This document shows, in pieces, positions 41,012-64,000 of a stretch of DNA of 64,000 bases. The position numbers and the translations under genes were made by a program. Within the stretch, counting starts at the first letter, position 1. Each line of letters starts with the position of its first letter. Below the pieces are notes generated by a model that was not told the DNA's origin, did not search any database, and worked only from the letters and a program-made list of their open reading frames with translations. The stretch spans positions 71,638,826 through 71,702,825 of the forward strand of contig NC_068986.1 of the NCBI RefSeq assembly GCF_001194135.2, in the 5' to 3' direction. The stretch is from Octopus bimaculoides. Taxonomy: Eukaryota.

Positions 41012-41019
41012 GTCTATCC

Positions 41020-41088
<69 letters not shown>
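40957..41088. repeat. (TATC)n microsatellite
   Basis: Direct reading. Confidence 0.95.
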
Positions 41089-41089
<1 letters not shown>

Positions 41090-41807: not shown

Positions 41808-41889
<82 letters not shown>

Positions 41890-42044
41890 NNNNNNNNNNN
41901 NNNNNNNNNNNNNNNNNNNNNNNNNNNNNNNNNNNNNNNNNNNNNNNNNNNNNNNNNNNNNNNNNNNNNNNNNNNNNNNNNNNNNNNNNNNNNNNNNNNN
42001 NNNNNNNNNNNNNNNNNNNNNNNNNNNNNNNNNNNNNNNNNNNN

Positions 42045-42097
<53 letters not shown>

Positions 42098-42681: not shown

Positions 42682-42714
<33 letters not shown>

Positions 42715-43127
42715 TATATACATATATATGTATACATGTGTATATTTATATATATATATATATATGCATATATATTATATTATACATATATATATGTGTG
42801 TGTGTGTTATAAGCCCGAGTACCTAAACAGTTCTAGGAATTACACCAAAGACCTATACTTGTCAAACACATTCATACGAAACTTGACAGCAGCAAACCGA
42901 TTGTAGTTAGCAAAGAAAATTTTGTTGTTCAGTTCTAAATCTTACCACTCGTTGGTTACCTAACAACACCTATCCTCTTCGATCATCATGGACAATCTTC
43001 CGAAAAGTAGCGCATCTGCCCTTTCTCCTCTGAATAAGTCAGACAAATCTAAAATCTTAACACTCATGCATTCAATATTTCGACAAGAATTGATTTATGA
43101 GATATCCCGATGAGCACACTATGGTCT

Positions 43128-43162
<35 letters not shown>

Positions 43163-43727
43163 NNNNNNNNNNNNNNNNNNNNNNNNNNNNNNNNNNNNNN
43201 NNNNNNNNNNNNNNNNNNNNNNNNNNNNNNNNNNNNNNNNNNNNNNNNNNNNNNNNNNNNNNNNNNNNNNNNNNNNNNNNNNNNNNNNNNNNNNNNNNNN
43301 NNNNNNNNNNNNNNNNNNNNNNNNNNNNNNNNNNNNNNNNNNNNNNNNNNNNNNNNNNNNNNNNNNNNNNNNNNNNNNNNNNNNNNNNNNNNNNNNNNNN
43401 NNNNNNNNNNNNNNNNNNNNNNNNNNNNNNNNNNNNNNNNNNNNNNNNNNNNNNNNNNNNNNNNNNNNNNNNNNNNNNNNNNNNNNNNNNNNNNNNNNNN
43501 NNNNNNNNNNNNNNNNNNNNNNNNNNNNNNNNNNNNNNNNNNNNNNNNNNNNNNNNNNNNNNNNNNNNNNNNNNNNNNNNNNNNNNNNNNNNNNNNNNNN
43601 NNNNNNNNNNNNNNNNNNNNNNNNNNNNNNNNNNNNNNNNNNNNNNNNNNNNNNNNNNNNNNNNNNNNNNNNNNNNNNNNNNNNNNNNNNNNNNNNNNNN
43701 NNNNNNNNNNNNNNNNNNNNNNNNNNN

Positions 43728-43770
<43 letters not shown>

Positions 43771-45169
43771 ATGTATATATGCAGCGTATATTTCTTACTG
43801 TAGAAAAATATAACATATGAAGCCGTAAATAAAAATATTAAAGAAAAGATGAAAAAGATGCAAATTCAGTTACGATGACATATTATACGTAGCGAATCAC
43901 CACAATGAACAAATGATTGCTGTTTAACCGAGAAGGCATGCTTTCTCGTCTCACGAAGAGTAACGCTATTTCCGTAATATTTCCAATATTTATACATTGT
44001 GTGTGTGTATGTATGCACATATATGTGTATGTTTACATGAATATATATGTAGATAGACTGACCGACATACACACAGATAGATACATACATAGATAGATAG
44101 ATAGAATTANNNNNNNNNNAAAGAGGAAAATGGAAAATCTTTTAGAATTATTTATTCGCCATTAAGCGTGTTTCATTTTCTAATAGAAGTTACAACATTG
44201 TACATGTAACAGAAAACATGTAAGATATCTCCTATCAAAAATTCTTCAGAGTATTATTTGCTACTCTGTCTGTAAGAATTTCTAATAGGCGATATCTTAC
44301 ATGTTTTCTATTTCATGTACAATTTTGTAACTCTTGTTAGCATTTGAAATATGGAAGGACGACTAAATAATAATAATATATATCCAATCTCCTGTTTTGA
44401 TATACCAGTACGTTCAACTCTTATGCATACTTCACACAAAAACAGTATCTCCAAATTGATTTGGAATACTGAAAAAGCTGATGTGCTTCAAGAGGACACA
44501 CCTTCGATTTACCCTATTTACATATCTACATAATACATACATACACATACACAAATATGCGTGTGTGCGCGCGCACATGCCTGTGCGTGTTTGTACGTTA
44601 TATATAACGCAAGTACGTGCGTTTTGTGTGTGTAACATATACATTAATACATATACAAACAATGAATCGTGAAACTATTGTTACTCTTTACACTTCATGT
44701 TAATTAAACTTTCATTCATTGAATGTCTTTCATATGGGATGAGATTCTCATTCTGCACAATTTTAGTTATTGCTGCTTATACTATCATTGTACTGCCCCG
44801 CTTAAGTCCTGATACAACTTGTGAAGGAAAATATATTACTTCATTGCAAAAATATTTAAAATATATTAAGAGAGAAGCATCACTTACCTCTCTATATTTT
44901 CTCTATATTTCAACAACCGACAAATAAAACTTCACCACGACATTTACAAATAACATCTGTCATAGAAACAGCACACTCAACACACACATGCTCACACACA
45001 CACATATCTATAAATGTATATGTATTGTTGTGTGTGAGTGCTTTTCAAAAGGAAAGGTTTCTCTATAACGTAATATATTACTTAAATTCTGAATAGTTGC
45101 TTTGTATACCTATGCCCACAATTGAAATACTTTGACATACATGAATAATTTAGACTACATGAAGAAAAA

Positions 45170-45720
45170 GCCAACCGACTCTACTTTTGCTACTACAATT
45201 TTTATTCGAGAACTCTTACATGCTAATTTATTTAGCAGGAACTTCATTTTGAGATATGGTGACATTTCTCTTCAAATCTCAAGAATCTTCGTTAGGATTC
45301 TTACTGAATACAGGATGGTATTTTCTGCAGATCACTTATGCTTCTCTCAATTCCAATAGCAGCCTCTGCGGCGTCTTAGATAGCAATTTGAGTGTCGTAT
45401 GATGTGTGCCAATTACCATAGGAACAATCGTCACCTTTGTTTTTCAAAAGCGCTTCATCTTTCTTGCCAGGTTCTTATGTTTTTCAGTTTTCTGAAGTTC
45501 TTTCATATACATTCCAGCACCATATTGTATTTGAAACTCTTTGTTCTGATAATGTTTATTTTTTTCTCTTTTATGGATATATTTTATCTATTTGCTTCAG
45601 TAGTATGGTTAGTCTTTATGGAAAAATCTTCTAGAATCCTGTAATTGTAATTCATCTTCACAACTTCTGGTTCTTGGTCACATTTTCCTGTCACTTTGAG
45701 TCCACAAACTTCGCAATGTA
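45170..45720 (-). mobile_element. Dong/R4-clade non-LTR 3' fragment C (restriction-like endonuclease end), decayed
   Basis: Minus strand KHKNLARKMKRF*KTKVTIVPMVIGT...ILYSVRILTKILEI* matches the C-terminal KY.DLA.E..RLW..KV.V.PIVIG.LG...ALL.SARILR.VLE pattern. Confidence 0.7.
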
Positions 45721-46018
45721 CACTTTATGAATAAAATCATTCAATTAGCAAAGCTTTTGCAAAATAATTGTGGTAACGAAAGCAGTCACGGAAGAAAGAG
45801 AGTATTAGTCTGCTTACAGTATACTAATGTTAGTGAATGAAAGTTTGCGATTTACTCGGGTTGTTTTTCTTCACGAAGTCAAAAATATTGAAGAGCGTAA
45901 CAACTAATCCCTCCTGGTTGTGGGAATGCAAGGCTCGCTTAAAAGGTAAGTAATCTTTTCGTCTCCTTTTCCACAGATTCTGTGTATGCTCTCTGACTAA
46001 TTAGCAATTCAGCCACAT

Positions 46019-46100
<82 letters not shown>

Positions 46101-46128
46101 TAATAATAATAATAATAATAATAATAAT
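46019..46128. repeat. (TAA)n microsatellite, 5' flank of Dong element
   Basis: Direct reading. Confidence 0.95.
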
Positions 46129-46834
46129 AGAGCAAGCACTAAGAACAAACTACGTAAAATACAGAGTAGACAACACATCAGAAAGTGATAAGTGCAGAAT
46201 TTGTGGACAAAATGGTGAAACCGTATGGCATATTACCAATCAATGTACGCCACTAGCCCAGAAGAAATATAAGAAATGCCACGACAATATAGCCAGGTTT
46301 GTCCATTGGACACTTCGCAACAACTATGGACTTGACAGAGAAAAAATTGGTACGACCACAAACCCGAAGGCATCATTGAAAATGATAATGCAAGGATCCT
46401 GTGGGATGTTATGATTCAGTGCGACCATGCGAAAGAGAATAGGAAGCCAGACATAGCCTTGAGAAAGAAACCAAACTATGTTGGATCATAGATACAGCAT
46501 GCTCAGCTGACAACAAGATATGCGATAAGAAAGAAATAAAAGTCGACAGGTATTACGGGTTAGCTTGGAAGGTAAAGCAGTTGTGGTCGATGAAAAAGGT
46601 GGTAGTTGTACCAATAATTGTTGGAACCTTGGAAACAGTGAGTAAAAATCTCGAGAAGTACATGGAACAAATAGGAGCTGCAATAAGGGTGGAGCACTTG
46701 CAGAAAACAGCACTGCTTGGAACCGCTCGAATACTCTGGAAGGTGCTCGAAAAATAAGAGGTGTTACCTTAGTTCATTGGTAATGAACAGCTGGCACCGT
46801 AGTACATCTCCAGCGTTAGACGCTGTGCAAAGGC
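46129..46834 (+). mobile_element. Dong/R4-clade non-LTR retrotransposon, 5'-truncated copy D (CCHC finger, REL endonuclease, 3' UTR)
   Basis: EQALRTN..CRICGQNGETVWHITNQC..HDNIARFVHW; after a frameshift WYDHKPEGIIEN..ILWD..IQCDH..RKPDI; after a second frameshift WIIDTA..VVVVPIIVGTL..LQKTALLGTARILWKVLEK* (TAA 46755-46757). A 77-nt 3' UTR follows, then (AAT)n. Confidence 0.92.
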
Positions 46835-46919
<85 letters not shown>

Positions 46920-46932
46920 TATTATTATTATT
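46835..46932. repeat. (AAT)n microsatellite, 3' flank/tail of Dong element
   Basis: Direct reading. Confidence 0.95.
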
Positions 46933-47744
46933 CAGGGGGCCACGACCGAGTTGGATTTTTCTGCCCTGTACCCACTACATTGACAGAGCTTGAATTTCAT
47001 TTTTCTGTATATGTGTCTGTGTGTTTGTGCCCCCACTCTCTCTCTACGAACATCATCAATATAGCTTGTCTTCATCCTCTATTAAGAGCGTGAAAGTTTC
47101 CAAACGAAAGTACCTGCTATTCAGAAGTTCAACTAAACAGATTCTTTGAATCAATCATCTCTTGTCATCTATACATCTTAACATTTTGTACTCTAAAAGC
47201 TGCTTATAAACGTCATTGCACCGTTTTGCAACATTTCAATAGAGGAATCTACGCACATCAATTCAAGCCAAGTATCACTCACACCAACACCACCATTCTC
47301 TCAATACCTTCGAAAATCATTATAGCCTATACAAGATTATAATGAAGATTAAACGTTAATAATTAAAATGAAGGTACATGTAACAGGACTTCATGTTATT
47401 GAGGAAATTTTCAATAAACAGCAACTTTATCTTTCAAATTCAATAATGATGCCATAAAAACTAAGCAATGACGTTCAGTTAACTACATGTGAAATTCACT
47501 GACTGACATCAGCAAAAGGCTGACGGATCAGAGTTAATTCTGATTCAACTAGAACTAAAGGAAGTAGATCTGGGCAGTCGAACAGACAGGAGAAAGGAAT
47601 CGAATGTCGTAGAACAGCTGATCTGCTGTACTCAGGCAATCAGCTGTTTGATTGTCACACATATCAATATTTGAGTCAGCAGCACAAAAAGACAAAGGCT
47701 GCTTTTATCTAAAGGGCTAAATTATGGCAGATAACATTTGTATA

Positions 47745-47802
<58 letters not shown>

Positions 47803-48317
47803 CCCAACTCNNNNNNNNNNNNNNNNNNNNNNNNNNNNNNNNNNNNNNNNNNNNNNNNNNNNNNNNNNNNNNNNNNNNNNNNNNNNNNNNNNNNNNNNNN
47901 NNNNNNNNNNNNNNNNNNNNNNNNNNNNNNNNNNNNNNNNNNNNNNNNNNNNNNNNNNNNNNNNNNNNNNNNNNNNNNNNNNNNNNNNNNNNNNNNNNNN
48001 NNNNNNNNNNNNNNNNNNNNNNNNNNNNNNNNNNNNNNNNNNNNNNNNNNNNNNNNNNNNNNNNNNNNNNNNNNNNNNNNNNNNNNNNNNNNNNNNNNNN
48101 NNNNNNNNNNNNNNNNNNNNNNNNNNNNNNNNNNNNNNNNNNNNNNNNNNNNNNNNNNNNNNNNNNNNNNNNNNNNNNNNNNNNNNNNNNNNNNNNNNNN
48201 NNNNNNNNNNNNNNNNNNNNNNNNNNNNNNNNNNNNNNNNNNNNNNNNNNNNNNNNNNNNNNNNNNNNNNNNNNNNNNNNNNNNNNNNNNNNNNNNNNNN
48301 NNNCACACACACACACG

Positions 48318-48366
<49 letters not shown>

Positions 48367-49814
48367 CATTACGAGTGGTTTCAAGAACAAAACACGACTA
48401 ACCAATACTTAATGTATGGTATTGCACTACTATTTGTGCATGACTTTAATTTTAATACAAAGTTCCAAGATGAAGATAATCATCAGATTACTAATGCGTA
48501 TATATTATTGAAATAGATTATTATGAAATACCATTCACCAAATATTCAATTTAACATAGCAAAAAGTACAAAAAAGTGCAAGAAAGTGAAAAAATTACAA
48601 AAAGTGCGAGCAACTTTAAGGGTAAATATTTCACAAAGATATAGTCCACTGTTGTTTAACATAAATATTATTAGAGAAAGTTTCACTTTCACTCCCAGCA
48701 ATTAGAATATTTTATCTAAATAATCTAATTATAAAAACATAAATACTCATATGGGATTTATGCCCTCGAAATAACAACTGTCAAAGTGTTTCAGCGAGTT
48801 ACCAATAATTTTGATTTCAAATTCCAATAATAAAGAAGATAATATAACTGAATACTAAATTACTATAAAAGGAAACTTTTATGGACCACTACGTTAATTC
48901 TTCCTAAATGTAGATGAGAAAATTACTACAGAGGTTCCATATGATATACGGAAGTTGTGAGACAGTCGTACTTTTAAAATAAATTATTAAATCATAAGCT
49001 ATAATAAGCATAAAATGTTTTAACCAATGTACGACTGAAAGATTTCTCGTGTTAATTAATGTCATAATATTAACCAACGCCTTAAATAAATGTTTTGAAA
49101 CTTTTACGAAAAATGTAAACATTTGAACAAATTTCATTTTAGACATATTTAGTAGCTCTAACTTAATCGTTTGAGGAAGATTTAGACGGAAGTTTCATAC
49201 GTGCTCTTCAGTGTTCAACAAAATCAATTCCTCCTCCAACATGATATTAGTCTACGGGCATTTTCCTTTCCCCACTCTTCTCATTAAATTATAAAGTGTA
49301 CGTATACATTTAAATATATCAATTGAATTTAATTAAATCCATACAAGACTGTATACATAAATGCGTAAGTGTATCCGTGCTTGTTTTATGGAAGCAACAG
49401 TTAGATCGATGGTGACCGAAGACATTTATTCATATAAAATTTAATAGCGTTCAGTATCGATGTTGAAACTTCCAGCTGGGTTTAACGATAACATTTTGAG
49501 AAGAAAAATATGGTTCGAGTAAACGTTCTTAGAAATGCAATTGGAACATATGGCAGTGTTTCTACTTCTCTATGCAAATAAGAAATATTAATGAAGGAAA
49601 ATGAATTATATATACTCATAATATATATATATTTCATTATATATATATATATATATATATACATANNNNNNNNNNNNNNNNNNNNNNNNNNNNNNNNNNN
49701 NNNNNNNNNNNNNNNNNNNNNNNNNNNNNNNNNNNNNNNNNNNNNNNNNNNNNNNNNNNNNNNNNNNNNNNNNNNNNNNNNNNNNNNNNNNNNNNNNNNN
49801 NNNNATATATATAC

Positions 49815-49940
49815 GGAGAGAGAGAGAGAGCGAGAGAGAGAGAGAGCGAGAGAGAGAGAGAGCGAGAGAGAGAGCGAGAGAGAGAGAGCGAGAGAGAGAG
49901 AGAGCGAGAGAGAGAGAGAGAGCGAGAGAGAGAGAGAGAG
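49815..49940. repeat. (GA)n with periodic GC interruptions
   Basis: Direct reading. Confidence 0.9.
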
Positions 49941-52633
49941 TGATATATATTTTCCTTTACTAAATTTTCTTCAATTGCTTGTAAGCAAAAGAGATATTTA
50001 CACCACATCACCGTCCCCAGTGCATTTACAAGAACGTTACTTCAACCATATATTTTTCGTTCGAAGTTTATCTCAATATGCTTTCACTCAGCCTAGCTGG
50101 ATATTTATGGCACGTCGCCAGCTATACTGAACTCTAGTAATAATATTTATTTAAATAAATTTCTTCGGTCATTGTCCATGCCTTCATAAAACAAGCATAG
50201 GCATATATTCACACACAGATATATACATAATGTATTATAACGATATAGTTTGTTTAAATCATAGTGCAGTAGGGTTAAACGTGATTTAGGATGCGACTGC
50301 TGTGCAGGTTGGAATTGCAAGAACGAAAAGCAGCAAAACAGAAACAAAAAAGTTTACACTTCTATTTTCTATTACAATATTTCGGCTAAAAATCTTTTAT
50401 CAGGAAATATGAAGAATGGATCTATTTTTTACTTAGTTTCGCATCTCACAACACATCTGCTCCGCATAAGACAAGGTAATTCTCTTCAGCACATTCGACC
50501 AATCAACATACTATTTCCGCACCAATAATAAACACGTTTCACCTGTAATACATATCCTCTAATGATGCTTCATATTCAACCACATCGTATATTCTCCCCT
50601 GCTTCACTACGTTTTGCCAGTAGGTTAATGGACAGACCTAAGTTTTGCTAGTAGGTTAATGGACAACCTAAGACATGACTAAATTATGTATACATCGTTG
50701 TAGACTATGAGGAGATTTAAATATGTTCCTATTTGATTGGGCTACTATTAGCGTTAAAAGATAACAACATTAATAACTACACTGCAATTTTTCATTCAGT
50801 AACGATGAATTAAACCACTTCATCTCGTTCACCAATATTTTCGCTTTGCATTTGCATTTGTTTCCATTATATCTGACATACGTGTTAGTTTCCTACATAC
50901 CATTACCGACAGTTCCTTGTATTACAAGTCCACTCATATGTCAATTATTGTTATTTTCTTGCCACAAGCGTTTCTGTTTCAAACGTGCCTTCCCTACCCA
51001 CATCAAGCCTGCACAGTATTCTACCAAACAGATGCACACCTTAAAACTGAATTCCTTTTTTCGTTACCTTCCTCTCGATCACGCGTCGTTTAAAAACTCA
51101 CTCTCCGAAGCATTTGCTTTCTTCTCTGAACCCGTGATCGCCCGCTTTTCTCTTTGGGAAATAATATAGATAAACGCAATCTCTCGACCAGAAGTCTCTT
51201 CGTTTCTCTCTATATAATCAGATACTTTCAAATACTGTCGTTGAAGTTACAACACTTGTAACTTCAAATCTGATACCACAGCACTAACTTCATGAAATTT
51301 CATCACAATGTCACTCAACCTGATCTCTGACAATCTCATCTGCTGCATTGGATAAAAAAAGGTATTAAATACGTGCGAAACTTGATGCCATCTAATAAAT
51401 AATTTTCGTCTTATTCCCCTTAATATCTGCAGTAATACTAAGGATATTTGCAAACCCGTGGTCGTCAATTTACTTTGTTACGACGTGTTTTTCTGTATTT
51501 GTTAGGGCTTGCTACACATTACAGATCAAATCACATCTGCTGTTATAAGGAGAAGTCACTTTATATTTGGCATGGCATCTCCAGCAAGCATAGGAAATGG
51601 CTTTTGCTATCCGTACTCATTTGTTTAAAATGTCATCAATCCTTTCTATTTTACATATTCCCGAGCGTACTTGCTGATATGAGAACACGTGAACCTATTC
51701 TCATACCTTGCATAGCGTCATCCTTATTCTTCCTTACATGCTTGTCTACCTAATGTTTGTGTAACCGTAATTTTATATGTATCTATTTATGTATCTTAAT
51801 ATTTTGCTTAGGCTTTGTGATACTAGGTGTAGAACTCAGTACACCTATGCTTCAGAACGATATGTTGGTCGAGGGCAGAACGGTAATAAGAAAATGAGAA
51901 AGAATTAAACGATTATCTTATGAACATATCCAAGGGTCCGATGAAACTATAAGCTGTTACTTTGGCATTCAACTACAAGTTCACTGCATCTTATAGTAAT
52001 AACAGTTGTAAGCTAATGACGTTCGTAAGATATTCATTTAATTCCTTTATTTATGTATGTACATGTGTGTGTATTTATGTGATTGTGGTCATACACATAC
52101 AGCATATCTTAATATGTTGCAATCTCTATATAACTGATTACTGTTCCATTTCTCACAGTTCTTCACATCGTAAATCTGGCTGTTAGCTTTCTACTAAAAT
52201 ACGTTTCATTTGGCTATTTCTTCCCTTACTTTTCCTACTCTCTTATCTCTTTTCTCCCTTGCTTATTCAAGACATTTATTTGGTCAGTGAAATCCTAATC
52301 ATTCTCTGCAAAAAGAATTTGCTAGAAAAGGCAGTACTCCCGTGTCCCATTAGCATTCAAAATCGTCTAGCATAATTAAATGCCAATTGTTTTTTTTTAA
52401 ATGTACTACATTCAGTCGATAAACATAAACAAGCAATTACAAATATATTGTAACAACAGCTGAACAAAAAATAACCATGTTTTGGAGGAAATGCATAAAA
52501 GGTTTCAACAACAGAAATACAAATGATGATAAATGTATTAACCTCACATTCATTTGAAGAGAAAGTTTGCAGCATACATATATAATAAAAAGTGAAGTAA
52601 TATGTATATGTTTGTGTGTATGTTTGTTTGCTT

Positions 52634-52674
<41 letters not shown>

Positions 52675-52723
52675 CGCGTATGTGCGCGTTTGGTGTCTGG
52701 TGTGTAAATATACATGCTCTATT

Positions 52724-52791
<68 letters not shown>

Positions 52792-55330
52792 CATACATAT
52801 TTATACACATTATATACATATATATACACACGCACACATATGTATAGATAAGTATATATATATGAATATATATGAATATACATATGTGCATACACGCAAA
52901 CACACATATACACGCATATGTATAGAAAGAAAGAGAGAGAGAAAGAGAAATTGGAGGCAAAGTTACATTTTAGTAATACTATTTATTGTTATACAAAATT
53001 GACTTATCAGGTGCATGTGAACATGTTTCAGATTATTTCTTATTGTCTTATTTAGTTAAAAACACTAAAGGAAATAAACTCACCTGCGAAATAGCATTAC
53101 TTCCATATTCTTTTCACAAAATGACGTTGGCGTTTCTATCCATGTCATTCACACTTCCACCAAAATACAATAGCCTAGACCTCTTATGTGTATAATTGTC
53201 CGACTCAATGACATTTTTTTTTAATTTGCTTGGTACAAGACTTACCAGTCACACCTCTCATATCATATCGTCAATGGAAATTTAACAAATGATTCAATAA
53301 TCAGTTAGAGTGTAAAATTATTGCTAAAGGTGGAATAAAGATGAATTTATATTTATGTCTGTGCAATAAATTAAGCAGCTAAAACTATTTTGATTGATGT
53401 GTTTGAATAACAATGAATTTAGATTTTCAGTTATTTTCTTAGCATGGAAATATTTTCATCAAATGCAGAGGTATATATTATGTGGAAATATCGAATTAAA
53501 GTTTCTAATTCTGATTTATACTTATACTGACACAAATTTTTAATCGTTATCGTTTACGGTTCTAATGAATATTCAATATAATACTTCATATACTAAATAA
53601 ATATGTTTTATGGCAGGATTCATTATATAAAATTAAAGTATTTGTGTTGTTATGATGTACAAATATGTACTTAATTGCATAAATGCATCATATATCTACT
53701 AAATATTTATTTCATTTATATATATATATATATATNNNNNNNNNNNNNNNNNNNNNNNNNNNNNNNNNNNNNNNNNNNNNNNNNNNNNNNNNNNNNNNNN
53801 NNNNNNNNNNNNNNNNNNNNNNNNNNNNNNNNNNNNNNNNNNNNNNNNNNNNNNNNNNNNNNNNNNNNNNNNNNNNNNNNNNNNNNNNNNNNNNNNNNNN
53901 NNNNNNNNNNNNNNNNNNNNNNNNNNNNNNNNNNNNNNNNNNNNNNNNNNNNNNNNNNNNNNNNNNNNNNNNNNNNNNNNNNNNNNNNNNNNNNNNNNNN
54001 NNNNNNNNNNNNNNNNNNNNNNNNNNNNNNNNNNNNNNNNNNNNNNNNNNNNNNNNNNNNNNNNNNNNNNNNNNNNNNNNNNNNNNNNNNNNNNNNNNNN
54101 NNNNNNNNNNNNNNNNNNNNNNNNNNNNNNNNNNNNNNNNNNNNNNNNNNNNNNNNNNNNNNNNNNNNNNNNNNNNNNNNNNNNNNNNNNNNNNNNNNNN
54201 NNNNNNNNNNNNNNNNNNNNNNNNNNNNNNNNNNNNNNNNNNNNNNNNNNNNNNNNNNNNNNNNNNNNNNNNNNNNNNNNNNNNNNNNNNNNNNNNNNNN
54301 NNNNNNNNNNNNNNNNNNNNNNNNNNNNNNNNNNNNNNNNNNNNNNNNNNNNNNNNNNNNNNNNNNNNNNNNNNNNNNNNNNNNNNNNNNNNNNNNNNNN
54401 NNNNNNNNNNNNNNNNNNNNNNNNNNNNNNNNNNNNNNNNNNNNNNNNNNNNNNNNNNNNNNNNNNNNNNNNNNNNNNNNNNNNNNNNNNNNNNNNNNNN
54501 NNNNNNNNNNNNNNNNNNNNNNNNNNNNNNNNNNNNNNNNNNNNNNNNNNNNNNNNNNNNNNNNNNNNNNNNNNNNNNNNNNNNNNNNNNNNNNNNNNNN
54601 NNNNNNNNNNNNNNNNNNNNNNNATATATATATATATATATACATATAAAATACATACATACAGACATACATGCACAGGAATGAAAAAGCATGAAAGAGG
54701 AAGATAGTACTTAATACATAGTGTAAATACCTTTTCATATATTTATTTAAACTGATGTTTTGGTCATTATTCCCCACCCTGAAATCTTTTAGGCAACTAA
54801 AATAGATACTCAAACTATTGTATTCGTTTGCATTCTTACGTTTTTTCATTAGTTAATCCATTTTGATCATTGATTGATAGTAATCATAGATAATGGTACA
54901 ATCCTAACATACTCATACTGCCACATCATTTTTCCATAATAACCCTATCTGCAAATGAGACCAAACTTTCAAACATAAATTTATTTTGTTTTATACGGGA
55001 TACGACGTTGTATTTTGTGTAGTGCGACTATGTATGTAGTATGTTACCATTTATATCTATGTATTTATAAATATTCCTTAGCTTTCAAATATGTCGTGAC
55101 AAGATGTTCAATTCGCTCTATACACATTCTGAAAAGAGTGCATATGTTGCGTGTAATTGATTTTAAATGTTCAGGTCACCGCTGAGATATATATGTACTT
55201 CTGTGCATTTTAATCATCGTACATTGTGTATAGCTTTGATTTGTTTTTGCTTGTGAGTGACTAGCTATTTAGTTATATTCTGGTGTGTGTGATTTACATT
55301 CTCTGTGTAGTTGTAGCTAACTTTATTCCT

Positions 55331-55560
55331 ATTTCTTTACTGCCCACAAGGGGCTACACACAGAGGGGACAAACAAGGATAGACAAACGAATTAAGTCGA
55401 TTATATCGATCCCAGTGCGTAACTGGTACTTATTTAATCGACCCCGAAAGGATGAAAGGCAAAGTCGACTTCTGCGGAATTTGAACTCAGAACGTAGCAG
55501 CAGACGAAATACCGCTAAGCATTTCGCCCGGCATGCTAACGTTTCTGCCAGCTCGCCGCC
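55331..55560 (-). mobile_element. Young full-length tRNA-derived SINE with target-site duplication
   Basis: Minus strand GGCGGCGAGCTGGCAGAAACGTTAG (A box-like)...GAGTTCAAATTCC (B box). Flanked by direct repeat (c)tttattcct at 55321-55330 and 55560-55569. Confidence 0.92.
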
Positions 55561-57355
55561 TTTATTCCTGTTAAAGAGCGTATAGTATCTATGTTCAGTA
55601 GGAAACAGTTCGATGATTAATACAAGGAAAGTCTTAGCTAACAAAAATAATCATAAAAGACAAAAAAAAAAGACCTATATGTAAATAGATATAGAAAATA
55701 TCTATCTTTAAAGGAAGACAAACATTTTCCGTGGTAAAAGCACAAGGATCTACACAATATTTCTTATAAACTAATATACACCGAGTCTGCACCATTCAAT
55801 ACTGATTCTCCTAAAACGAGCCAATTAGAGTTCAGTCCTCACATTCAGCAAATGGACCAAAAATTCATCAGAGCCAGACAAATGAAGATTATCTTGTCTA
55901 ATTCACTCTTGAACCTAAATATAGTGTAACTCACTACATAAAAGCTGGGTCATGACCAAATTCCTTAGTTTATATATATATATATATTTGTGAGTGGTTG
56001 TGCATGTATGGGTCTATATATGTGTGCGTGTATGTGTGTATAGAGAAATACAACATGTGTCAACATTCATCTTTTAAATGTGTATGAAATAATAGTTTCG
56101 AATTTTCTATCACCTGTTTCATTACGTCTGAAGTTTATTTCTTAATATAACGTAGGAGCTAACATGACATTCAGCAAGGAAAAAAAGGATTAAAGGGAGG
56201 CGAGATTGAAAATCTTTTAAATAAAAATGAACATATATCTATCTATACCAGCTGGCAAAATCTGAATTCCAAAAGATATAGAGAAGTAGAGTATCAGTGT
56301 TTTGCTTATACATGTACGAAAAAGGCTTTCTTTCTAAATAATTCTTATTAGTAAGTATTAATACAGAGTAATATAAGAATGTATAATCATCTACCTCTAT
56401 TGGATTGTTATCCTATTTTTATATTGACTTGTTAGGACTTGAATTAATTCAAACGTCTTTTGGGTCAAATGATATAAAAAAAATTTGAAAATTCAAACTT
56501 GATTAACAATAAAAAAAAATCACAAAATTAGCAAATTTCATTTGTCTTTGATGTCACATGGTTGTAATTAGAGAGGAGCAAAGATAAAAAATTTTTATTC
56601 GTAAACATAAATTTTACGATTTTAGAAATCGTGCCTTAATTCAGTTCATAATATAAGAAGATGATTTTAAAGAATTGGCCGTATAAACTAGTCTGTTGCA
56701 TTAAAGAATTACAATAATATGTTAAAAATAAATTGCTTCGTTTTTAGTGTAGTTGAAGTTTTACTTGTTACTCAGCTACGGCATATTTGCAAATACCAGT
56801 ATGCCATTCTCATNNNNNNNNNNNNNNNNNNNNNNNNNNNNNNNNNNNNNNNNNNNNNNNNNNNNNNNNNNNNNNNNNNNNNNNNNNNNNNNNNNNNNNN
56901 NNNNNNNNNNNNNNNNNNNNNNNNNNNNNNNNNNNNNNNNNNNNNNNNNNNNNNNNNNNNNNNNNNNNNNNNNNNNNNNNNNNNNNNNNNNNNNNNNNNN
57001 NNNNNNNNNNNNNNNNNNNNNNNNNNNNNNNNNNNNNNNNNNNNNNNNNNNNNNNNNNNNNNNNNNNNNNNNNNNNNNNNNNNNNNNNNNNNNNNNNNNN
57101 NNNNNNNNNNNNNNNNNNNNNNNNNNNNNNNNATCAATTTATTAATAAATTAATAATTAATAATTTTTACCAAGCCCATCGGTATGTAAGCACCATTATC
57201 GGTGTGGAACTTATTTAAAAGTTCTTATACATTTATAAACAAAATTAAGGGATCAGCAAACAGGTTGCTTCACCACATACCGAAGTTCAGAAATAGCAGC
57301 TAAAAATGCTGAAACTGCTATCTGTTGGAGTTTCACCATTTTTAGCTGTTATTTC

Positions 57356-57397
<42 letters not shown>

Positions 57398-59049
57398 TAT
57401 AAGTTTCTATGTATCTATGGGAATTCACTCATATTAAAGTCTTAATATAAATTAAACCTACTAAGTAATTTTTAATAACTAACTTAAATGTTATATTCAT
57501 CGATGTCATTAATTTCATAAGAATTTTTATGAAAACAAAATACGAAAGCATAATGTGTCTCATATTCCATGTAGACGTAATAGTAGTAAAGTAGCTGAAT
57601 ATGGTCTCCTAGAAGTTATTGGCTACAGTGTCTGTAGTGGTGTATGATATCGGTAGTATAGATAGTGGTGGTAGTGGTATTAACAATGATATGATGGTGG
57701 CGGTGATGTTGGTGGTACAAACTGTGAGAATAGTTTATTAGGTGAAATTATTGGCAATGCACGTGATTTTGGTTGGTGATGATCATGTTGGTGTCGAAAG
57801 TATAAAAACACATCAAATGTTTGGATTTCAATCTAAAACATTGCAGTAATGGCTTTCATATTGTTTATAATATACTGGGAACTATATTTGATTTATTTTT
57901 ATATATTAGTTATTAGTTATCAGAGATTTTTTACTAAATCTGTTACATATTATCGAATTAGATCTTTGATTTTATATTTCTCAATGATATATAGAAAATA
58001 AAAGATTGAAAGCTTTTTATGTAATTTCATCGAGGTATCAAAGATTACTAACTATTTCAACATTTCATTCTGAAATAGTTTGCCATGTTTTGAATAAATA
58101 TGCCAAAATATTATATGTAAGTTTAAATTTAAGGTTTGGCGAAGTAATTTTATATGTGACATTCTATAAAACTAATTTAGGTACTATATTTAGATTAGAA
58201 ATACTATTCCGAAATACATATTTCAAACGTTATTTGTTTGACAATTTTCTATTTTCTGGATTATACAAATTTGAATGATAGCAGAAATAGGGAAGTAAAA
58301 ATCCCCATAGGCGAGTTTTTAATAATTTCCAAGAAAAATGTACATGTAACCTGCTAAAGTACAAACGTCACTTATATTCGTACCATAAAACAATGTATGG
58401 TGTTATTATCATTAAAGAATTATCATTTATATCCTTCATATGATTTTCTTGCGAACTAAAATCGTCCAGTAATATATTTTCGCGAATCGAATGAATGAAA
58501 GATAAAAGTGAGAGACGTTGTCATATTCAATTCTAAAATGTGTAACTTAATATCCGATGAATGAAAATTAGTGAAATTATTAGCAATCTATAACGAAATT
58601 AGATTTGGGTGGATTTATTTATAATGGGTATTATAATTTACATAATCGTGTTTTGGCTGATAATATAGATAATCAGCTAACCTAAAATATGTGTACTAAA
58701 GTACAGATTCTGTAATTCTGCATGTATTCTTGTAACGTGATCACTGTCAGATTAATCTGTTTCATCTGGTGTTGTAGTGTCTTTACGCTTTTGAGGTCAG
58801 TAACTATACTTAGATAACTTATCAAAGCCTATCAGTTTGTGAAATCTCAAAAAAAGTTTTAAATTATATGCTGTATGTAACTGTAAAAGAAAATGATGAA
58901 TATGTATCTATATATTTTAAGACATCAGATGCAACTCGTTGAAAATCTGTATTTGTTTTAAAATGTTAATCTAACATTCATATGATTGTTATATTTATTG
59001 CTTAATGAGTTTAAATTTTTCTTGCTATTTCAGATTCTGTCCCATACAT

Positions 59050-59850
59050 ATATGGCTTGCATCATTCTAGAATTTTCCAGAGGAGATCGAATCAAATCTG
59101 CATTCTTTCGATTTGCAAGTTAGATAATATAGTGATAGTCCTCTTCATTTTGTTTCTGAAAAAAGTAGTATAATTGAAAGAGTCATGGTTACATTTACCC
59201 GCCGGCATTTCGTTTGCTTCGCTCTCGTTATCTAGGCTAATTTATGGATATGATAGATGCCTTGGCTCTATATGTCTAATTTTGAAGGTATAACGTTTTG
59301 TTTGTGAATAAGCAAATCACATCTACTGATTTGAGTTTCTTAGGTTATTTGCTTTGTTGTACAGCTATAATTTAGTTTACAACTGGGTCTCTTAAATAAC
59401 TTTCTGTGAAGGGGTTGACAGGCAAATATTTGTTGTAAATAGCGCCTAAAAAAGGTGTAGTTATTTCTGATTTTTCCTCATATGTATTTCAGTTTATTAA
59501 TGTCAGTAACTTAGGAGTATATTTGATATCATCCTAATGTCTACTGTCTTGTAGTATGGAGCACCTATTTCTCACTTTGTTTTTGAAAACTACGAGCAGT
59601 TGGCTAGATTAGCCGTTTTATTATAGATGTCTTGGAAAATTCTAGTAGAGCACATGGTTGTAATATTTCCGAGGTCGAAGTATAAAATTCAACAACGTCA
59701 GTTCATGTGAATTGGCGCTCTCTTTATTGCTAATATATATATTTTTAACCAGATAATTATGGTCATTACTAATATTGTATAATACATGGAGGTTAGTAGC
59801 TTTACTAATTATATCATGATAGTTATTTAACATTTTTGTAATCAATTAAT
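59050..59850 (-). mobile_element. Penelope-like retroelement relic (RT C-terminus, linker, start of GIY-YIG region)
   Basis: Minus strand VLYNISNDHNYLVKNIYISNKESANS (like LYVN..SNHPP.I.KNIP.SI..R.S..SS), FLGAIYNKYLP and HRKLFKRPSCKLNYSC (like KLHKIFNRNT.KLSYSC), and AGKCNH (like GKCL). Many disablements. Confidence 0.55.
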
Positions 59851-60947
59851 CCCAGCTCACGCTTACAGAAATTTATTAATCTGCATTGAGGATTAGTGGC
59901 GATTAATGTCTAGTTACGTTTATGCACAACGACTTCTACCTTTAATATCTATACTCTTCTAAGTATGTTTGGTAGAGTAATCGTATTTGAATTATCCTAA
60001 TTCGTTTTTAGTGAAGTAATTTCTTCTATGTATATTTACAATACACATAACTGTAAAATATTTGGATATGTGTACACAATAAAGTTACCATCTGCTTTTC
60101 GGGTGTTTAGTGTAATAAATTTTAAAAATCTTAAAGCAGAAAGCTGTTTTAAGTAATGATGTAATCTGACCAAAATATTACATAGCAAAATCTGTAACTT
60201 GCCAGATTTCAATGAAATATAAACCAGTAGATTTTCACATTCTTTCTTCACTAAACTGTGTGCGGGTTAAAAATGTACAATGAAGATTTATTACCACAAT
60301 AACATGTATGAATAAATGTAGGTTTTGCGGTAAATCTCAAGTATAATAGAAATAATGTTCAAGTTTAAAAGACAAATGATTTGCTCACATAAACACATAA
60401 GCTTTATTCAGAATCGGTACCAGTGTACCTCCAAATATATAAATCTACTAAAATCTCTGTGTGACTTCATACGATTAAGTTCTATTTTTCTATTTTGCAG
60501 ACAATAAAGTTTGGAAAGTAAGTTAATATGAAGACGTTTCTTGCCTTTCTTTCGTTGTCTCCATAAGATAATATTGGTGATATCAGTTTTAATGAAATAC
60601 CGTAATGCACATAGTGAACTATCTTGTATATAATCATCAGCAACCACCAGCTGTTTTAAGGGCAATTATCTTTAAACATTAATTATTTCTACTTTATAAG
60701 CGTGAGTCTTGTTGTTTAGTAACAACTCAGCCCTAACTGAGCTGTTCAGAAACATTGCAGTTTCTAATTTCCCGTATTCTTTTATTTAAGTGATAGTGTG
60801 ACTTGAGGGCATTTGGAAATGATATAGGCATCTACGTATGTTTCTGTATTTTCTTTTGCTACAAATTCTATTAAGATTTCAATCCAATTTCATACAATTG
60901 ACTTTTATTTTTCTGCTTGTGGATCTATTATTCTCTCTTCCTCCCTC

Positions 60948-60948
60948 A

Positions 60949-61034
<86 letters not shown>
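60948..61034. repeat. (CT)n microsatellite
   Basis: Direct reading. Confidence 0.95.
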
Positions 61035-61036
<2 letters not shown>

Positions 61037-61183
61037 AATCATATAATTTACACATACAGGCTAACACAAACGCACACATATATATAGGAGTATATACATA
61101 CATATACATATGTATATATATACATACATACGTACGTATATATATATATATGTGTGTATATTTATACATGCATGTATATAACG

Positions 61184-61253
<70 letters not shown>

Positions 61254-63810
61254 GAAATAGATAAATATATATATAAATAGATTACAATAAAAATAAAGTC
61301 CAGGGAGATGGTGGTGGTCTGCGTCAGCAAATATCGAATTTATTGATATAAATACAAAGTTTTTTTAAAGTTCATATACCATTAAGAAAAGCGGATGAAT
61401 TTTGGACAAAGTCTCTCTTCGTGGAGTGTGAAAGTTTTTCTCCTTTCTTAAACTACGAGAGCATGGACAAACTGGTGAATAGCAGGAAATGACAATGAAT
61501 TATATGTGCATGAAAGTAGACACAACATTTGTTTTGATATTTCTTTTATCTGAATTCATAACAGCCCCACTCTTTCCCGCAACAGTAATCCATTCTGTGG
61601 TACCCAGACTTGAACAGTTAGGCAATTTTAAATGCATTCAATACACATTTTACACCTGTCTTTATATCAATAATAAAATAGTAATCACCTGACCCAAATC
61701 ATTATTCCAAATCACCCAAACTTTTGGTTGCATATCTGCCAATATTACACATTGCATTACATACAAATTCTGCTGTGCTTTATAAGTTGGTTAATGAAGA
61801 AAGCATTGTCTAAATGATTGCTTTGGTAGTGAACGCGTTGTCCCACACACAATAGGCCACCTCATTTCAACAAACTTGGTTAGTCCATTTACTTCTCCTC
61901 GACGTCCGAACTTTAGGACCCTCTGGGAAACACATAGGACAACGCATCATTTTTACCTTCGGGATATCTCCTTCAGTTATTTTAATTTTTACTTTATTTT
62001 AATGCTCACAATGATGATCATTTTCGAATACAACTTAGTGTGAATATGCATTTCTAATCATCAGCCTGAGCCAGGACGAATGCAGACAGTACTATCGACA
62101 TCATGGTGATTACTATGATCACCGATCTTGCCAAAAGAAAGTCCTCTACTTCAGACTTATCAATTACCATCTGCTTCCTTACCCTTCGATCCTTCAATTT
62201 TACCCAAATATGTTATCTCTCACCTTCTAGACTTACCCTCCTTTAAGTTATCTTCTTCCCCTCGCCAACCACTTTTCAGTCCCACCGTTCCTCGACACAC
62301 AGCGCAACATTTAATTCTTACTCGTTCCCTGTCATTCTCCAATGTGCTTTCGCTCTCATTGATTAAGAATGAGGAAAACATTTCTTGCTCCCCGAAGTTT
62401 TAAATGTTTATAAAACTTAAAAGATACGTTACCAATACATTACCAATATGCTAAGATCAAGTGAATGTTATTATTACTGTATATGAAATTAACGTAGTAT
62501 GTTTAATATGTGTGATACATCATTAGATGAATAATCAGTAATTAAAATCCTTATTTGCTATCAGTTGCTCTCAAGCAACGACTCGTGTATAATACCTAAG
62601 CATTAAAATAAATGGAAAATATCGGGCTTTATAATCCCGCCATAAAACAGGAATTTTTAAAACCTAGCAACTTACATAAAATTCTACATAAATAGAATCT
62701 ATTCTCTACAAAAATTACCATTCCATTGATTGTAAAATTCAAGATTTTAAGACTCTTTAAATTAATGCTTACGTAAACAGAATAATGGATAACAGAATCA
62801 GTTGTACATCGGAGAAAATGTTTTACCGTGTTTAACTATATTTGTTTATGCTTTGAATCAATCTTGGATTTTCATCAACACTTAGAGAGCGATAGAAAAT
62901 GCACACGTGGAGTACAAGAATAAATTTAATCGGCTGTTACTCCGTCCTCCAAAATTAGGAGTTGTGCTAAATTTAGAAGTCTATAACTGTTTCTGTAGAT
63001 TGTGCATAGTATGTGTATGAAACTCCCGTAAAGATTGAAAACACAAATTATGTTCTCTATGATAATTGATATAAATTGAAGTGTGCTACATATCGAGTCA
63101 TATATCAGCTCATCGTACTTGCACGCTTATACAGAAATATTAAGAAGTCCCATTTCTCTTCTATCCTGCTAGAAACCAGTCTACATTGCTTATTTAATGT
63201 TCTCTGCATTGATAATTATTACGTTTCCTATATTTAAAATCTGTAGTATATTTAGATAACTATTTCTATACTTCCACCGAAATTGTATTGTATACTCAAC
63301 GTACATGTTTTAAAAATCAATAAATATCTTATGAAGTATTAGAATATTGATTACTGTTTAAATGCTTTTTAAACCCTAACAAGTGCGATGTTGCGTGCGT
63401 GTGTGCGTGCGTTTGTGTGTCTGTGGATGGTGAACTTGTTTAGTAAATGTCTGTATTGTGAACTTTTTAGTAAATATTCTTTCTTTCAGAAATTATTTTA
63501 TTTTAAATTAAGCCCCAAACATTGACCCAGGTTAAGTGAAAATGCTTTTAACATCAATCTTATATAACCTATTGTGCTCTCGTGCAAGGGTGATGAAGAT
63601 ATGAATAAATTACCTTAGCATTGCACAAAGAGGGTATTACACTCTTGGGTGAGAAGTTTGACCTGTAGTAGTGCTTTCTTGTGAGTTTAACGAAAGAATG
63701 CATTACTATGGTCAAACATTTCATGGATATGGGATCGTGAAAACGATGACGTCATTGGTGAAACGAACACCGTTTTTCTAATCAGTGGTAGAGAATGGAG
63801 AAAAACTCAC

Positions 63811-63894
63811 CTATCAATGGAACTGTTGCGGCATGAGGGACTGACTCGGCCAGCAATAGCAACAAGAGGAAAAAGGCGACGAAAATGTTCATTC
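63811..63894 (-). CDS. nAChR-like subunit, M2 / M2-M3 loop exon, downstream copy A (84 nt)
   Basis: Acceptor atttatgttacag|GA (phase 1) and donor ATAG|gtgagt (phase 1). Encodes (G)MNIFVAFFLLLLLLAESVPHAATVPLI(G); the final G plus GT of the M3 exon gives Gly, in frame. Confidence 0.9.
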
Positions 63895-63934
63895 CTGTAA
63901 CATAAATAAGTGGTGGAAAATGAGATTGACTCAC

Positions 63935-64000
63935 CTATTAAAGGAATGGACGAGGCCGCCCGAGGAGTGGATTCTGCCAGCAATAGCAACAAGACGAAAA
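63935..64000 (-). CDS. nAChR-like subunit, M2 / M2-M3 loop exon, upstream copy B (partial; acceptor outside window)
   Basis: Encodes ..FVLLLLLAESTPRAASSIPLI(G) with donor ATAG|gtgagt in the same phase as copy A; clearly paralogous to copy A. Confidence 0.88.

What the first reader, a model, noticed from the sequence alone, without database searches (positions are those of the whole stretch)
63811..64000. Tandem duplicated, probably mutually exclusive exons encoding the pore helix of a molluscan nAChR
Seen: two adjacent exons encode the same region, A (G)MNIFVAFFLLLLLLAESVPHAAT-VPLI(G) and B ..FVLLLLLAESTPRAASSIPLI(G). Both have phase-1 ATAG|GTGAGT donors compatible with the single M3 exon. 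Seven of nine shared-residue codons from A19' onward differ at the third position, yet frame, splice sites and key residues are kept, indicating old duplication and selection on both. Known: insect nAChR alpha6 has mutually exclusive exons 8a/8b/8c covering the same segment (G4' to the Gly before M3). I know of no described cephalopod case, but could not search. Inference: one gene makes channels with swappable pore and gating modules, probably convergent with insects.
Basis: partly seen in the sequence, partly recalled or inferred. Interest (0 to 1): 0.92.

Follow-up and report, generated by a model that had tools for sequence, protein, structure and literature searches.

The report
Alternative pore exons in octopus acetylcholine receptor
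An octopus acetylcholine-gated channel gene carries two tandem copies of the small exon for its pore-lining helix and gating loop and uses one or the other; this is a real and old feature, but the same trick is known in insects and the isoforms are already in public gene models.

Summary
On the minus strand, exon A (window 63894-63811, 84 nt) and exon B (64021-63935, 87 nt, running 21 nt past the window end) are tandem copies of the M2 exon. Both have AG|GA acceptors and identical TAG|GTGAGT phase-1 donors, and only 40 nt separate them.

The genome is Octopus bimaculoides. My gene model reproduces the RefSeq isoforms letter for letter. RefSeq already lists A-only, B-only and skip-both isoforms in two Octopus species, and none with both exons.

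De novo mRNAs from two distant cephalopods (dS 1.4-2.0) are spliced M1-A-M3, with an identical exon A peptide. B matches the canonical molluscan sequence and A is derived, so the duplication is old and both copies are kept.

The subunit is alpha-type but carries Pro-Ala instead of Glu at -2'/-1', so it is probably an ACh-gated anion channel. That filter lies in the constant M1 exon. Only 13', 22', 24' and the M2-M3 linker are swapped.

Lottia, Physella, a scallop and both octopus paralogues have a single M2 exon. Aplysia, Lingula and Dimorphilus have pairs of their own, so the duplications are recurrent and independent of insect alpha6 exon 8.

Verdict: a new member of a known kind, of moderate interest.

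The parts
63935..64000 (-). Exon B (upstream copy of the M2 exon). Its 3' 66 nt lie in the window. The full exon is 87 nt and runs to window-equivalent 64021 (G000:C6:71702846-71702760). It encodes (G)MNIFVAFFVLLLLLAESTPRAASSIPLI(G), the canonical sequence of the family.
   Evidence: sequence, acceptor ttttacag|GA, donor TAG|gtgagt. (translation equals RefSeq isoforms X1/X3/X5/X6). (matches the gastropod and bivalve consensus).
63895..63934 (-). The 40-nt intron between B and A: gtgagtcaatctcattttccaccacttatttatgttacag. It is probably too short to be excised, so B cannot be joined to A.
   Evidence: Its first ~31 nt are about 77% identical to the sequence after exon A, and its last ~12-35 nt resemble the sequence before exon B. 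This points to a tandem duplication unit of about 127 nt (D1/D3/D7).
63811..63894 (-). Exon A (downstream, derived copy of the M2 exon), 84 nt. It encodes (G)MNIFVAFFLLLLLLAESVPHAATVPLI(G).
   Evidence: (translation equals RefSeq X2 and XP_014776329). (the same peptide in spliced mRNAs of two other cephalopods).
31229..63810 (-). Intron of about 32.6 kb between exon A and the M3 exon. It contains several assembly gaps.
31110..31228 (-). Constitutive M3 exon (119 nt). It has a phase-1 acceptor shared by A and B and a donor GCA|gtaagt. It encodes (G)AYFCLSMVMITLSTVFACVVANMFFRGVRVHRAPYWLRA.
27066..27527 (-). Last coding exon: cytoplasmic loop plus M4, with the stop codon at 27068-27066.
   Evidence: PF02932 positions 101-233..

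Best explanation
The window holds the 3' half of an Octopus bimaculoides gene, about 162 kb long on the minus strand. It encodes an alpha-type nicotinic-receptor-like subunit of the lophotrochozoan Pro-Ala clade.

Origin. The ancestral 87-nt M2 exon (G4' to the Gly before M3) was duplicated in tandem as a unit of about 127 nt. This happened in the cephalopod lineage, before the split between Octopus and two distant cephalopods. Copy B kept the canonical sequence. Copy A acquired V13'L, T22'V, R24'H, a one-residue deletion and S-I to T-V changes in the M2-M3 linker, and has been frozen at the protein level since.

Splicing. Each mRNA carries A or B (shown at the level of gene models and, for A, of assembled mRNAs). 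Exclusivity is most likely enforced sterically (inferred). The B donor and the A branch point and acceptor lie within one 40-nt intron, so B cannot be spliced to A. Double inclusion would be in frame (171 nt), so mRNA surveillance would not remove it.

Function (inferred from homology to solved and mutated pLGICs). The charge-selectivity filter (P-2' A-1' K0') lies in the constant M1 exon and is not swapped. The switch therefore should not change ion charge selectivity. It should tune gating kinetics, conductance and possibly pH or Zn sensitivity, through 13' in the hydrophobic girdle, the 24' ring of charge (Arg versus His) and the length of the M2-M3 coupling loop.

The channel is presumably an inhibitory, ACh-gated anion channel.
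For: Sequence anatomy.

Gene model: the assembled CDS translates exactly into RefSeq isoforms.

Isoforms:
- O. bimaculoides: X1/X3/X5/X6 = B; X2 and XP_014776329 = A; X4 = neither.
- O. sinensis: X1/X3 = B; X2 = A; X4 = neither.
- Argonauta and O. vulgaris models = B.
- None has both exons.

Transcripts: five Logan contigs from five SRA runs, representing two species, are M1-A-M3 with an identical A peptide. Divergence is dS 1.44 and 2.0 from Octopus, with dN 0.026-0.034.

B is canonical.

Duplication unit and the 40-nt intron.

Lineage-specific origin:
- One M2 exon in each of the two octopus paralogues.
- One M2 exon in Physella, Lottia and Ylistrum, which belong to the same mollusc clade.

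Anion-type signature:
- PAK replaces GEK in alignment to alpha4 and alpha7.
- The gene falls in a clade with Lymnaea types I, K and B-like subunits and is related to flatworm ACC subunits.
- The Pro-Ala motif is the hallmark of nicotinic chloride channels (PMC4055736).

ACh-site hallmarks are visible in the sequence: Cys-loop C-x13-C, WLPD, GSWTYDG, YACCPEPYPD.
Against: - I found no de novo transcript containing B. B expression rests on gene models in four octopod species.
- A skip-both isoform is annotated, so exclusivity is not absolute.
- No junction read counts were available.
- The minimal spliceable intron length in octopus was not measured. Some animals excise introns of about 40 nt, and the Dimorphilus gene model removes a short (about 44 nt) intron between its two copies.
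- The RNA fold of the exon pair is not unusually stable (z = -1.37), so a structure-based mechanism is neither supported nor excluded.
- Anion selectivity and all functional differences between the isoforms are untested.
- The two other cephalopod species are unidentified, and it is unknown whether they have exon B.
Confidence: 0.75

Rival explanations
1. One of the two copies is an unused, decaying pseudo-exon. The gene really makes one M2 form, and the second isoform in the databases is an annotation by-product.
For: I found only A-type de novo transcripts, and only from non-Octopus cephalopods. No independent B-type transcript turned up. Gnomon isoforms can rest on few reads.
Against: - Both exons keep an open frame, identical strong donors and good acceptors.
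- The A peptide is unchanged across dS 1.4-2.0.
- B is 26-28/28 identical to canonical exons of gastropods and bivalves, while its synonymous sites differ from A.
- B is the form modelled in Argonauta, O. vulgaris, O. sinensis and in four of six M2-bearing O. bimaculoides isoforms.
Confidence: 0.07
2. The pair is an assembly artefact: collapsed or expanded haplotypes next to a gap.
For: A 730-nt N gap lies 573 nt upstream of exon B, and the region has many gaps.
Against: - The copies lie 40 nt apart within contiguous sequence and differ at 16 aligned positions plus a 3-nt indel.
- An independent assembly of O. sinensis yields both A and B isoforms.
- Exon A occurs in mRNA of other species.
Confidence: 0.01
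3. The duplication is ancient and homologous across Lophotrochozoa, or even with insect alpha6 exon 8. It was inherited from a common ancestor and then lost many times.
For: - M2 exon pairs also exist in Aplysia, Lingula and Dimorphilus.
- The Lingula variant shares L13', a one-residue-shorter linker and V before PLI with octopus A.
- Exon size (87 nt) and phases are the same in all.
Against: - There is a single M2 exon in Lottia, Physella (close to the Aplysia gene) and Ylistrum, and in both octopus paralogues.
- The genes with pairs fall in different clades of the tree.
- Exon order is reversed in Lingula (variant first, about 690 nt apart) relative to octopus (canonical first, 40 nt apart).
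- The octopus copies still share alignable intron flanks.
Confidence: 0.1
4. Exclusivity is enforced by competing RNA base-pairing (a docking site and selector type, as in Dscam or 14-3-3xi), not by the short intron.
For: - The 3' end of exon B (GUCCAUUCCUUUAA) is 12/14 complementary to the acceptor plus first 8 nt of both A and B (I13/I14).
- The 5' halves of A and B are nucleotide-identical. That stretch also shows zero change between Octopus and species X despite dS 1.44.
Against: - The fold energy of the region is not significant (z = -1.37).
- Short inverted repeats of this quality are common in the same 1.4 kb (29 pairs).
- Species Y has four synonymous changes in the stretch.
- No conserved intronic partner was identified.
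Confidence: 0.15

Closest known systems
Insect nAChR alpha6 mutually exclusive exons 8a/8b/8c (Drosophila D-alpha6 and orthologues; PMC1919356, PMC6393475)
   Same: - Tandem duplicated copies of the exon for the second transmembrane helix of an alpha7-like Cys-loop subunit, used one at a time.
- One copy is highly conserved and the others are more divergent.
- The duplication is hundreds of millions of years old.
- Exon-skipped transcripts also occur.
- From memory, not tested here: the insect exon is also 87 nt with the same boundaries, as is human CHRNA7 exon 8.
   Different: - It is a different gene lineage. The octopus gene is in the lophotrochozoan Pro-Ala (anion-type) clade, not alpha6 or alpha7 proper.
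- The duplication is independent, since there are single exons in Lottia, Physella, the scallop and the octopus paralogues.
- There are two copies rather than up to three.
- The 40-nt inter-exon intron suggests steric exclusion. I did not look up the inter-exon intron lengths or the exclusion mechanism of the insect cluster.
Lymnaea stagnalis nAChR subunits of the Pro-Ala type (types B, I, K; van Nierop et al. 2005/2006) and Schistosoma SmACC acetylcholine-gated chloride channels (PMC4055736)
   Same: - Alpha7-like extracellular domain with YxCC.
- SPAK in place of GEK at the cytoplasmic mouth of M2.
- M2 nearly identical to exon B.
- Lymnaea type I is one of three gastropod co-orthologues of the octopus gene, at 58% identity.
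   Different: - No M2 alternative exons are reported or seen for those subunits. Gastropods have three tandem paralogous genes where octopus has one gene with two M2 exons.
- Anion selectivity has been shown for Lymnaea B and SmACC-1, not for this octopus subunit.
Alpha-tropomyosin exons 2/3 (Smith and Nadal-Ginard 1989, cited in PMC7969005): mutually exclusive splicing by steric hindrance
   Same: Two adjacent alternative exons are separated by an interval too short for U1 and U2 snRNPs to assemble on the same intron. The exons therefore can never be joined to each other.
   Different: In tropomyosin the constraint comes from an unusually distant branch point in a longer intron. Here the whole intron is 40 nt. 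The mechanism is inferred here, not tested.
M2 exon pairs found here in Aplysia californica (XP_005098514/515), Lingula anatina (XP_013418084 versus XP_013418082) and Dimorphilus gyrociliatus (DgyrCDS7085)
   Same: - The same exon of the same Pro-Ala subfamily is duplicated in tandem, with the same phases and a size of 84-87 nt.
- RefSeq isoforms carry one or the other in Aplysia and Lingula.
   Different: - These are different genes and clades, with different exon order and spacing (Lingula about 690 nt, Dimorphilus about 44 nt).
- In those pairs, synonymous differences are spread over the whole exon, whereas the octopus 5' halves are identical.

Membership tests
[quoted passage not shown] | Neur_chan_LBD plus Neur_chan_memb domains; Cys-loop C-x13-C; vicinal Cys pair in loop C (YxCC); four transmembrane helices | tested here: met
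   - PF02931 hits at C6:71822314-71828061 and a PF02932 hit in the window. Both domains are precomputed for the protein.
- CFFDITFFPFDDQEC and YACCPEPYPD are present in the translated model.
- The best solved relatives are alpha4, alpha3 and alpha7, with E down to 3e-97.
Lophotrochozoan nicotinic anion channels (Lymnaea B/I/K type, flatworm ACC) | Pro-Ala at -2'/-1' replacing the Glu of cation-selective nAChRs | tested here: met
   SPAKLQLG aligns to CGEKITLC of alpha4. The same motif is present in all 100+ relatives aligned. The criterion comes from PMC4055736.
Lophotrochozoan nicotinic anion channels (Lymnaea B/I/K type, flatworm ACC) | Phylogenetic placement with characterised members | tested here: met
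   The tree places the cephalopod gene in a mollusc clade with 100% SH-aLRT support that includes Lymnaea type I. Sister clades hold the type B-like and type K subunits. Flatworm ACC-named proteins are 68-70% identical over M1-M3.
Lophotrochozoan nicotinic anion channels (Lymnaea B/I/K type, flatworm ACC) | ACh-gated chloride (anion) current | not testable with these tools
   Needs heterologous expression and reversal-potential measurements.
Mutually exclusive exon (MXE) pair from tandem exon duplication | Adjacent homologous exons of similar length with the same splice phases, each compatible with both flanking constitutive exons | tested here: met
   The exons are 87 and 84 nt. Both begin GA after AG and end G|GTGAGT. 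The M1 exon ends TTA G|gt and the M3 exon begins GT after AG. Direct repeat D1 is 86% identical.
Mutually exclusive exon (MXE) pair from tandem exon duplication | Transcripts contain exactly one of the two, never both | tested here: inconclusive
   Eleven RefSeq isoforms in two Octopus species and five de novo mRNAs in two other cephalopods never contain both exons. However, skip-both isoforms are annotated (X4), no junction counts were available, and I found no de novo B transcript.
Steric-hindrance type of mutual exclusion (alpha-tropomyosin 2/3 type) | The distance from the upstream exon's 5' splice site to the downstream exon's branch point is below the minimum for spliceosome assembly | tested here: inconclusive
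   The whole intron is 40 nt, and the candidate branch A (cttAt) lies about 27 nt from the donor.
Insect nAChR alpha6 exon 8 cluster | Orthology to alpha6 and descent of the duplicated exons from the insect duplication | tested here: not met
   The gene lies in a lophotrochozoan-specific Pro-Ala clade. Close mollusc relatives and the octopus paralogues have a single M2 exon. The resemblance is parallel evolution on a shared ancestral exon structure.

The most novel reading that the evidence does not exclude
The 87-nt M2 exon of alpha7-like Cys-loop subunits is a recurrent target of tandem duplication. It has independently produced mutually exclusive 'gating cassettes' in insects (alpha6), coleoid cephalopods, Aplysia, a brachiopod and an annelid.

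In cephalopods the derived cassette A (L13', H24', a linker one residue shorter) has been frozen for the whole coleoid radiation and is the only form assembled from two distant cephalopods' transcriptomes (possibly decapodiforms). Cephalopod brains would then have two biophysically distinct classes of inhibitory (chloride) cholinergic receptors from one gene, where gastropods instead use three paralogous genes.

The nucleotide-identical 5' halves of A and B would reflect either gene conversion or a nucleotide-level constraint, such as a splicing or RNA-editing element.
Probability: 0.4. Interest if true: 0.6.

Novelty: new member of a known kind. Interest (0 to 1): 0.45.

Why it matters
If the two isoforms differ in kinetics, conductance or modulation, octopus neurons could tune inhibitory cholinergic transmission by splicing rather than by expressing different genes. 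This is the same strategy insects use for alpha6, the spinosad target.

The repeated, independent duplication of the same small exon across phyla is a clean example of parallel evolution. It is constrained by an ancient exon-intron structure, and it marks 13', 24' and the M2-M3 linker as the natural tuning knobs of pentameric channels.

The case also gives a compact natural test of steric exclusion by a 40-nt intron.

It does not open a new category. The isoforms are already in RefSeq and the principle is established.

Tried and rejected
- **De novo B-type cephalopod transcripts.** I searched with a region-restricted search and a 168-aa fragment query. No new cephalopod clusters turned up.
- **Genomic DNA of other species.** I tried to fetch Argonauta and Aplysia orthologues, but the genes are longer than 100 kb, so no DNA was returned. 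Isoforms that are not the longest product are not on record.
- **Species of the Logan runs.** I could not identify it (no paper mentions the run). It can only be described by dS.
- **RNA-structure explanation.** The fold z-score is -1.37. The 14-nt complementarity is no better than many chance pairs, so I kept it only as a weak rival.
- **Absolute nucleotide freeze of the 5' half.** This idea was weakened by species Y, which has four synonymous changes there.
- **Assembly artefact and pseudo-exon readings.** Both rejected (see the rival explanations).
- **Literature.** Searches for mollusc or cephalopod nAChR mutually exclusive exons found nothing relevant. The van Nierop 2005 paper is not held in the library.
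- **First Python attempts.** These failed on file layout or off-by-a-few exon coordinates and were redone.

Full report
**Observation**

The gene is on the minus strand. The window end shows two copies of one small exon. I located the window at G000:C6:71638826-71702825 and read beyond it.

- Exon A: window 63894-63811, 84 nt, ttacag|GA ATG AAC ... ATA G|gtgagt.
- Exon B: window-equivalent 64021-63935, 87 nt, ttttacag|GA ATG AAC ... ATA G|gtgagt.

The two exons are separated by only 40 nt.

Both donors are phase 1 and fit the M3 exon acceptor at 31228. The upstream M1 exon ends TTA G|gtaagt, so either exon can be spliced in.

The repeat is a 79-nt direct repeat at 86% identity with 127-nt spacing. 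In the whole 2.34-Gb genome, only four exons match this peptide: B, A, and one in each of two paralogues.

In contrast, all 13 shared codons of the 5' half are identical (Fisher p = 2e-4).

**Gene model and identity**

Pfam scans of the genome place the ligand-binding-domain exons about 120 kb upstream (C6:71822314-71828061) and the last exon in the window.

I assembled exons 2-4 (L005), A or B, M3 and M4. The two translations are identical to RefSeq proteins of Octopus bimaculoides, so the genome is O. bimaculoides and the model is correct.

The protein has:
- the Cys-loop;
- the loop-C YACC pair, which makes it alpha-type;
- the conserved aromatic binding residues.

Its closest solved relatives are alpha4, alpha3 and alpha7. 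Where cation-selective nAChRs have G-E-K, it has P-A-K. This Pro-Ala motif is the hallmark of the nicotinic chloride channels of Lymnaea and Schistosoma (PMC4055736).

In a maximum-likelihood tree:
- The cephalopod gene is the single co-orthologue of three gastropod paralogues, one of which is Lymnaea type I.
- This lies within a mollusc clade with 100% support.
- The type B-like and type K clades, and the non-mollusc lophotrochozoan clade, lie outside it.

**Are the exons used, and exclusively?**

RefSeq lists the following:

| Species | B only | A only | Neither |
|---|---|---|---|
| O. bimaculoides | X1, X3, X5, X6 | X2, and XP_014776329 (earlier release) | X4 |
| O. sinensis | X1, X3 | X2 | X4 |

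- The Argonauta hians and O. vulgaris models carry B.
- No model carries both exons.
- Five de novo transcript contigs from five sequencing runs (Logan; L006, L012-L015) are continuous M1-A-M3 mRNAs.
- These represent two species. Their distances are dS 1.44 and 2.0 from Octopus and 0.74 from each other, with dN 0.026-0.034. Their exon A peptide is identical to the octopus one.
- I could not find a de novo B transcript. B usage therefore rests on gene models.

**Age and polarity**

B matches the consensus of gastropod and bivalve orthologues almost residue for residue. A is derived, with L13', V22', H24', a one-residue deletion and T-V in the linker.

The same derived A is present in lineages separated by saturated synonymous divergence. 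The duplication therefore predates that split, and A has been under strong purifying selection since.

**Independence from other cases**

Exon pairs of the same kind exist in:
- Aplysia: RefSeq X1 against X2, with X3 skipping both.
- Lingula: X2 against X1/X3/X4. The exons lie at L008 40497-40583 and 41270-41359.
- Dimorphilus: L007 4143-4232 and 4277-4366, which a gene model reads through as a double M2.

By contrast, the complete M1-to-M3 intervals of Physella (close to the Aplysia gene), Lottia and the scallop Ylistrum contain a single M2 exon. So do both octopus paralogues.

Other differences also point to separate origins:
- The genes with pairs lie in different clades.
- In Lingula the variant exon comes first and lies about 690 nt from the canonical one.
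- The octopus copies still share recognisable intron flanks.

Recurrent independent duplication is the most economical reading. The insect alpha6 exon 8 cluster (PMC1919356) is a further independent instance on what is, from my memory of CHRNA7 and D-alpha6 gene structures, the same ancestral 87-nt exon. I did not test that last point here.

**Mechanism**

Double inclusion would add 171 nt in frame, so nonsense-mediated decay cannot police it. The 40-nt intron leaves at most about 27 nt between the B donor and a plausible branch point. That is below the distance at which U1 and U2 can assemble on one intron in the systems where this has been measured (the alpha-tropomyosin precedent, cited in PMC7969005; steric hindrance is listed among MXE mechanisms in PMC1919356).

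I therefore infer steric exclusion. This is not demonstrated, and the minimal intron size in octopus is unknown to me.

A competing-structure mechanism has only weak support. There is a 12/14 complementarity between the end of B and both acceptors, but the fold z-score is only -1.37.

**Functional reading**

The filter residues -2' to 3' are encoded by the constant M1 exon, so charge selectivity is not swapped. The swapped positions are:
- 13', which is pore-lining and part of the hydrophobic girdle;
- 22' and 24' at the outer mouth, where Arg against His would change the ring of charge in a presumed anion channel;
- the M2-M3 linker, whose length and sequence couple agonist binding to gating.

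B aligns without gaps to alpha4, whereas A is one residue shorter. Different gating kinetics, conductance or modulation is the expected consequence. This is inference from homology.

**Unexplained**

The 5' halves of A and B are nucleotide-identical apart from the one base that makes L/V13'. The same 18-codon stretch shows no change between Octopus and species X, where 43% of conserved codons differ gene-wide (0.57^15 = 2e-4). Species Y, however, has four synonymous changes there.

The Lingula and Dimorphilus pairs show no such mosaic. Gene conversion, a splicing enhancer or an RNA-editing-linked constraint are all possible.

**Verdict**

But the isoforms are already in public annotation, the principle is known from insects, and the 'swappable pore' is really a swappable upper pore and gating linker in a probable anion channel. 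I rate it a new member of a known kind, of moderate interest. The recurrent duplication across phyla is the most interesting aspect.

Noticed in passing
window 63849-63894 and window-equivalent 63976-64021 (5' halves of exons A and B); L006 1052-1105: The exon pair is a mosaic. The 5' halves are nucleotide-identical except for one base, while the 3' halves are saturated at synonymous sites. The same 18-codon stretch (QLGMNIFVAFFLLLLLLA) shows zero nucleotide change between Octopus and a cephalopod at dS 1.44. A second such island (20 codons, PVLNTSETVTVNFDLSLIQI) lies in exon 2. The cause is unknown; gene conversion, a splicing enhancer or an RNA-editing constraint are possible.
   Followed up: partly
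window 63735-63766 (L002 561-592), intron about 45-75 nt downstream of exon A: An 18-nt imperfect palindrome centred on TGACGTCA (TCGTGAAAACGATGACGT / ACGTCATTGGTGAAACGA). It could be an intronic hairpin or a CRE-like site.
   Followed up: no
L009 56111-56161 versus 56221-56298 (Physella acuta orthologue of the Aplysia gene): A partial second copy of the M3 exon (GAYFCMDMIMITLSDVF) lies about 60 nt upstream of the annotated M3 exon. This may be another tandem exon duplication in the same gene family.
   Followed up: no
Ruditapes philippinarum isoforms X1/X2/X3 (P0034, P0202, P0036): The three isoforms share the M2 exon but differ in the M1-M2 loop (PPEAPAKLSL / PPESPAKLML / PPESPAKLQL). This suggests mutually exclusive copies of the M1-containing exon in a clam orthologue.
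   Followed up: no
upstream of L005 (beyond G000:C6:71828100), seen in RefSeq isoforms P0001, P0122, P0124, P0126: The same octopus gene has further alternative N-terminal cassettes: a 35-residue insert (AQTTETT...QIQTK) and a 5-residue micro-exon (QCRTR/ECRTR) just before the mature N-terminus.
   Followed up: no
G000:C15:37.8-38.4 Mb: There is a dense cluster of dozens of single-exon Neur_chan_LBD genes. This is consistent with the expanded intronless nAChR-like (chemotactile receptor) family of octopus. It is unrelated to the finding.
   Followed up: no
window 936-57132 and L002 1420-2149: The window has 16 assembly gaps (N runs of 10-888 nt), and a 730-nt gap lies 573 nt upstream of exon B. 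Additional exon copies or regulatory elements could be hidden in them.
   Followed up: partly
RefSeq isoforms P0125, P0127 (Octopus), P0182, P0204 (Aplysia): Isoforms that skip the M2 exon altogether (in frame, LQLG-AYF) are annotated in two Octopus species and in two Aplysia genes. They may be splicing noise or M2-less regulatory subunits.
   Followed up: no
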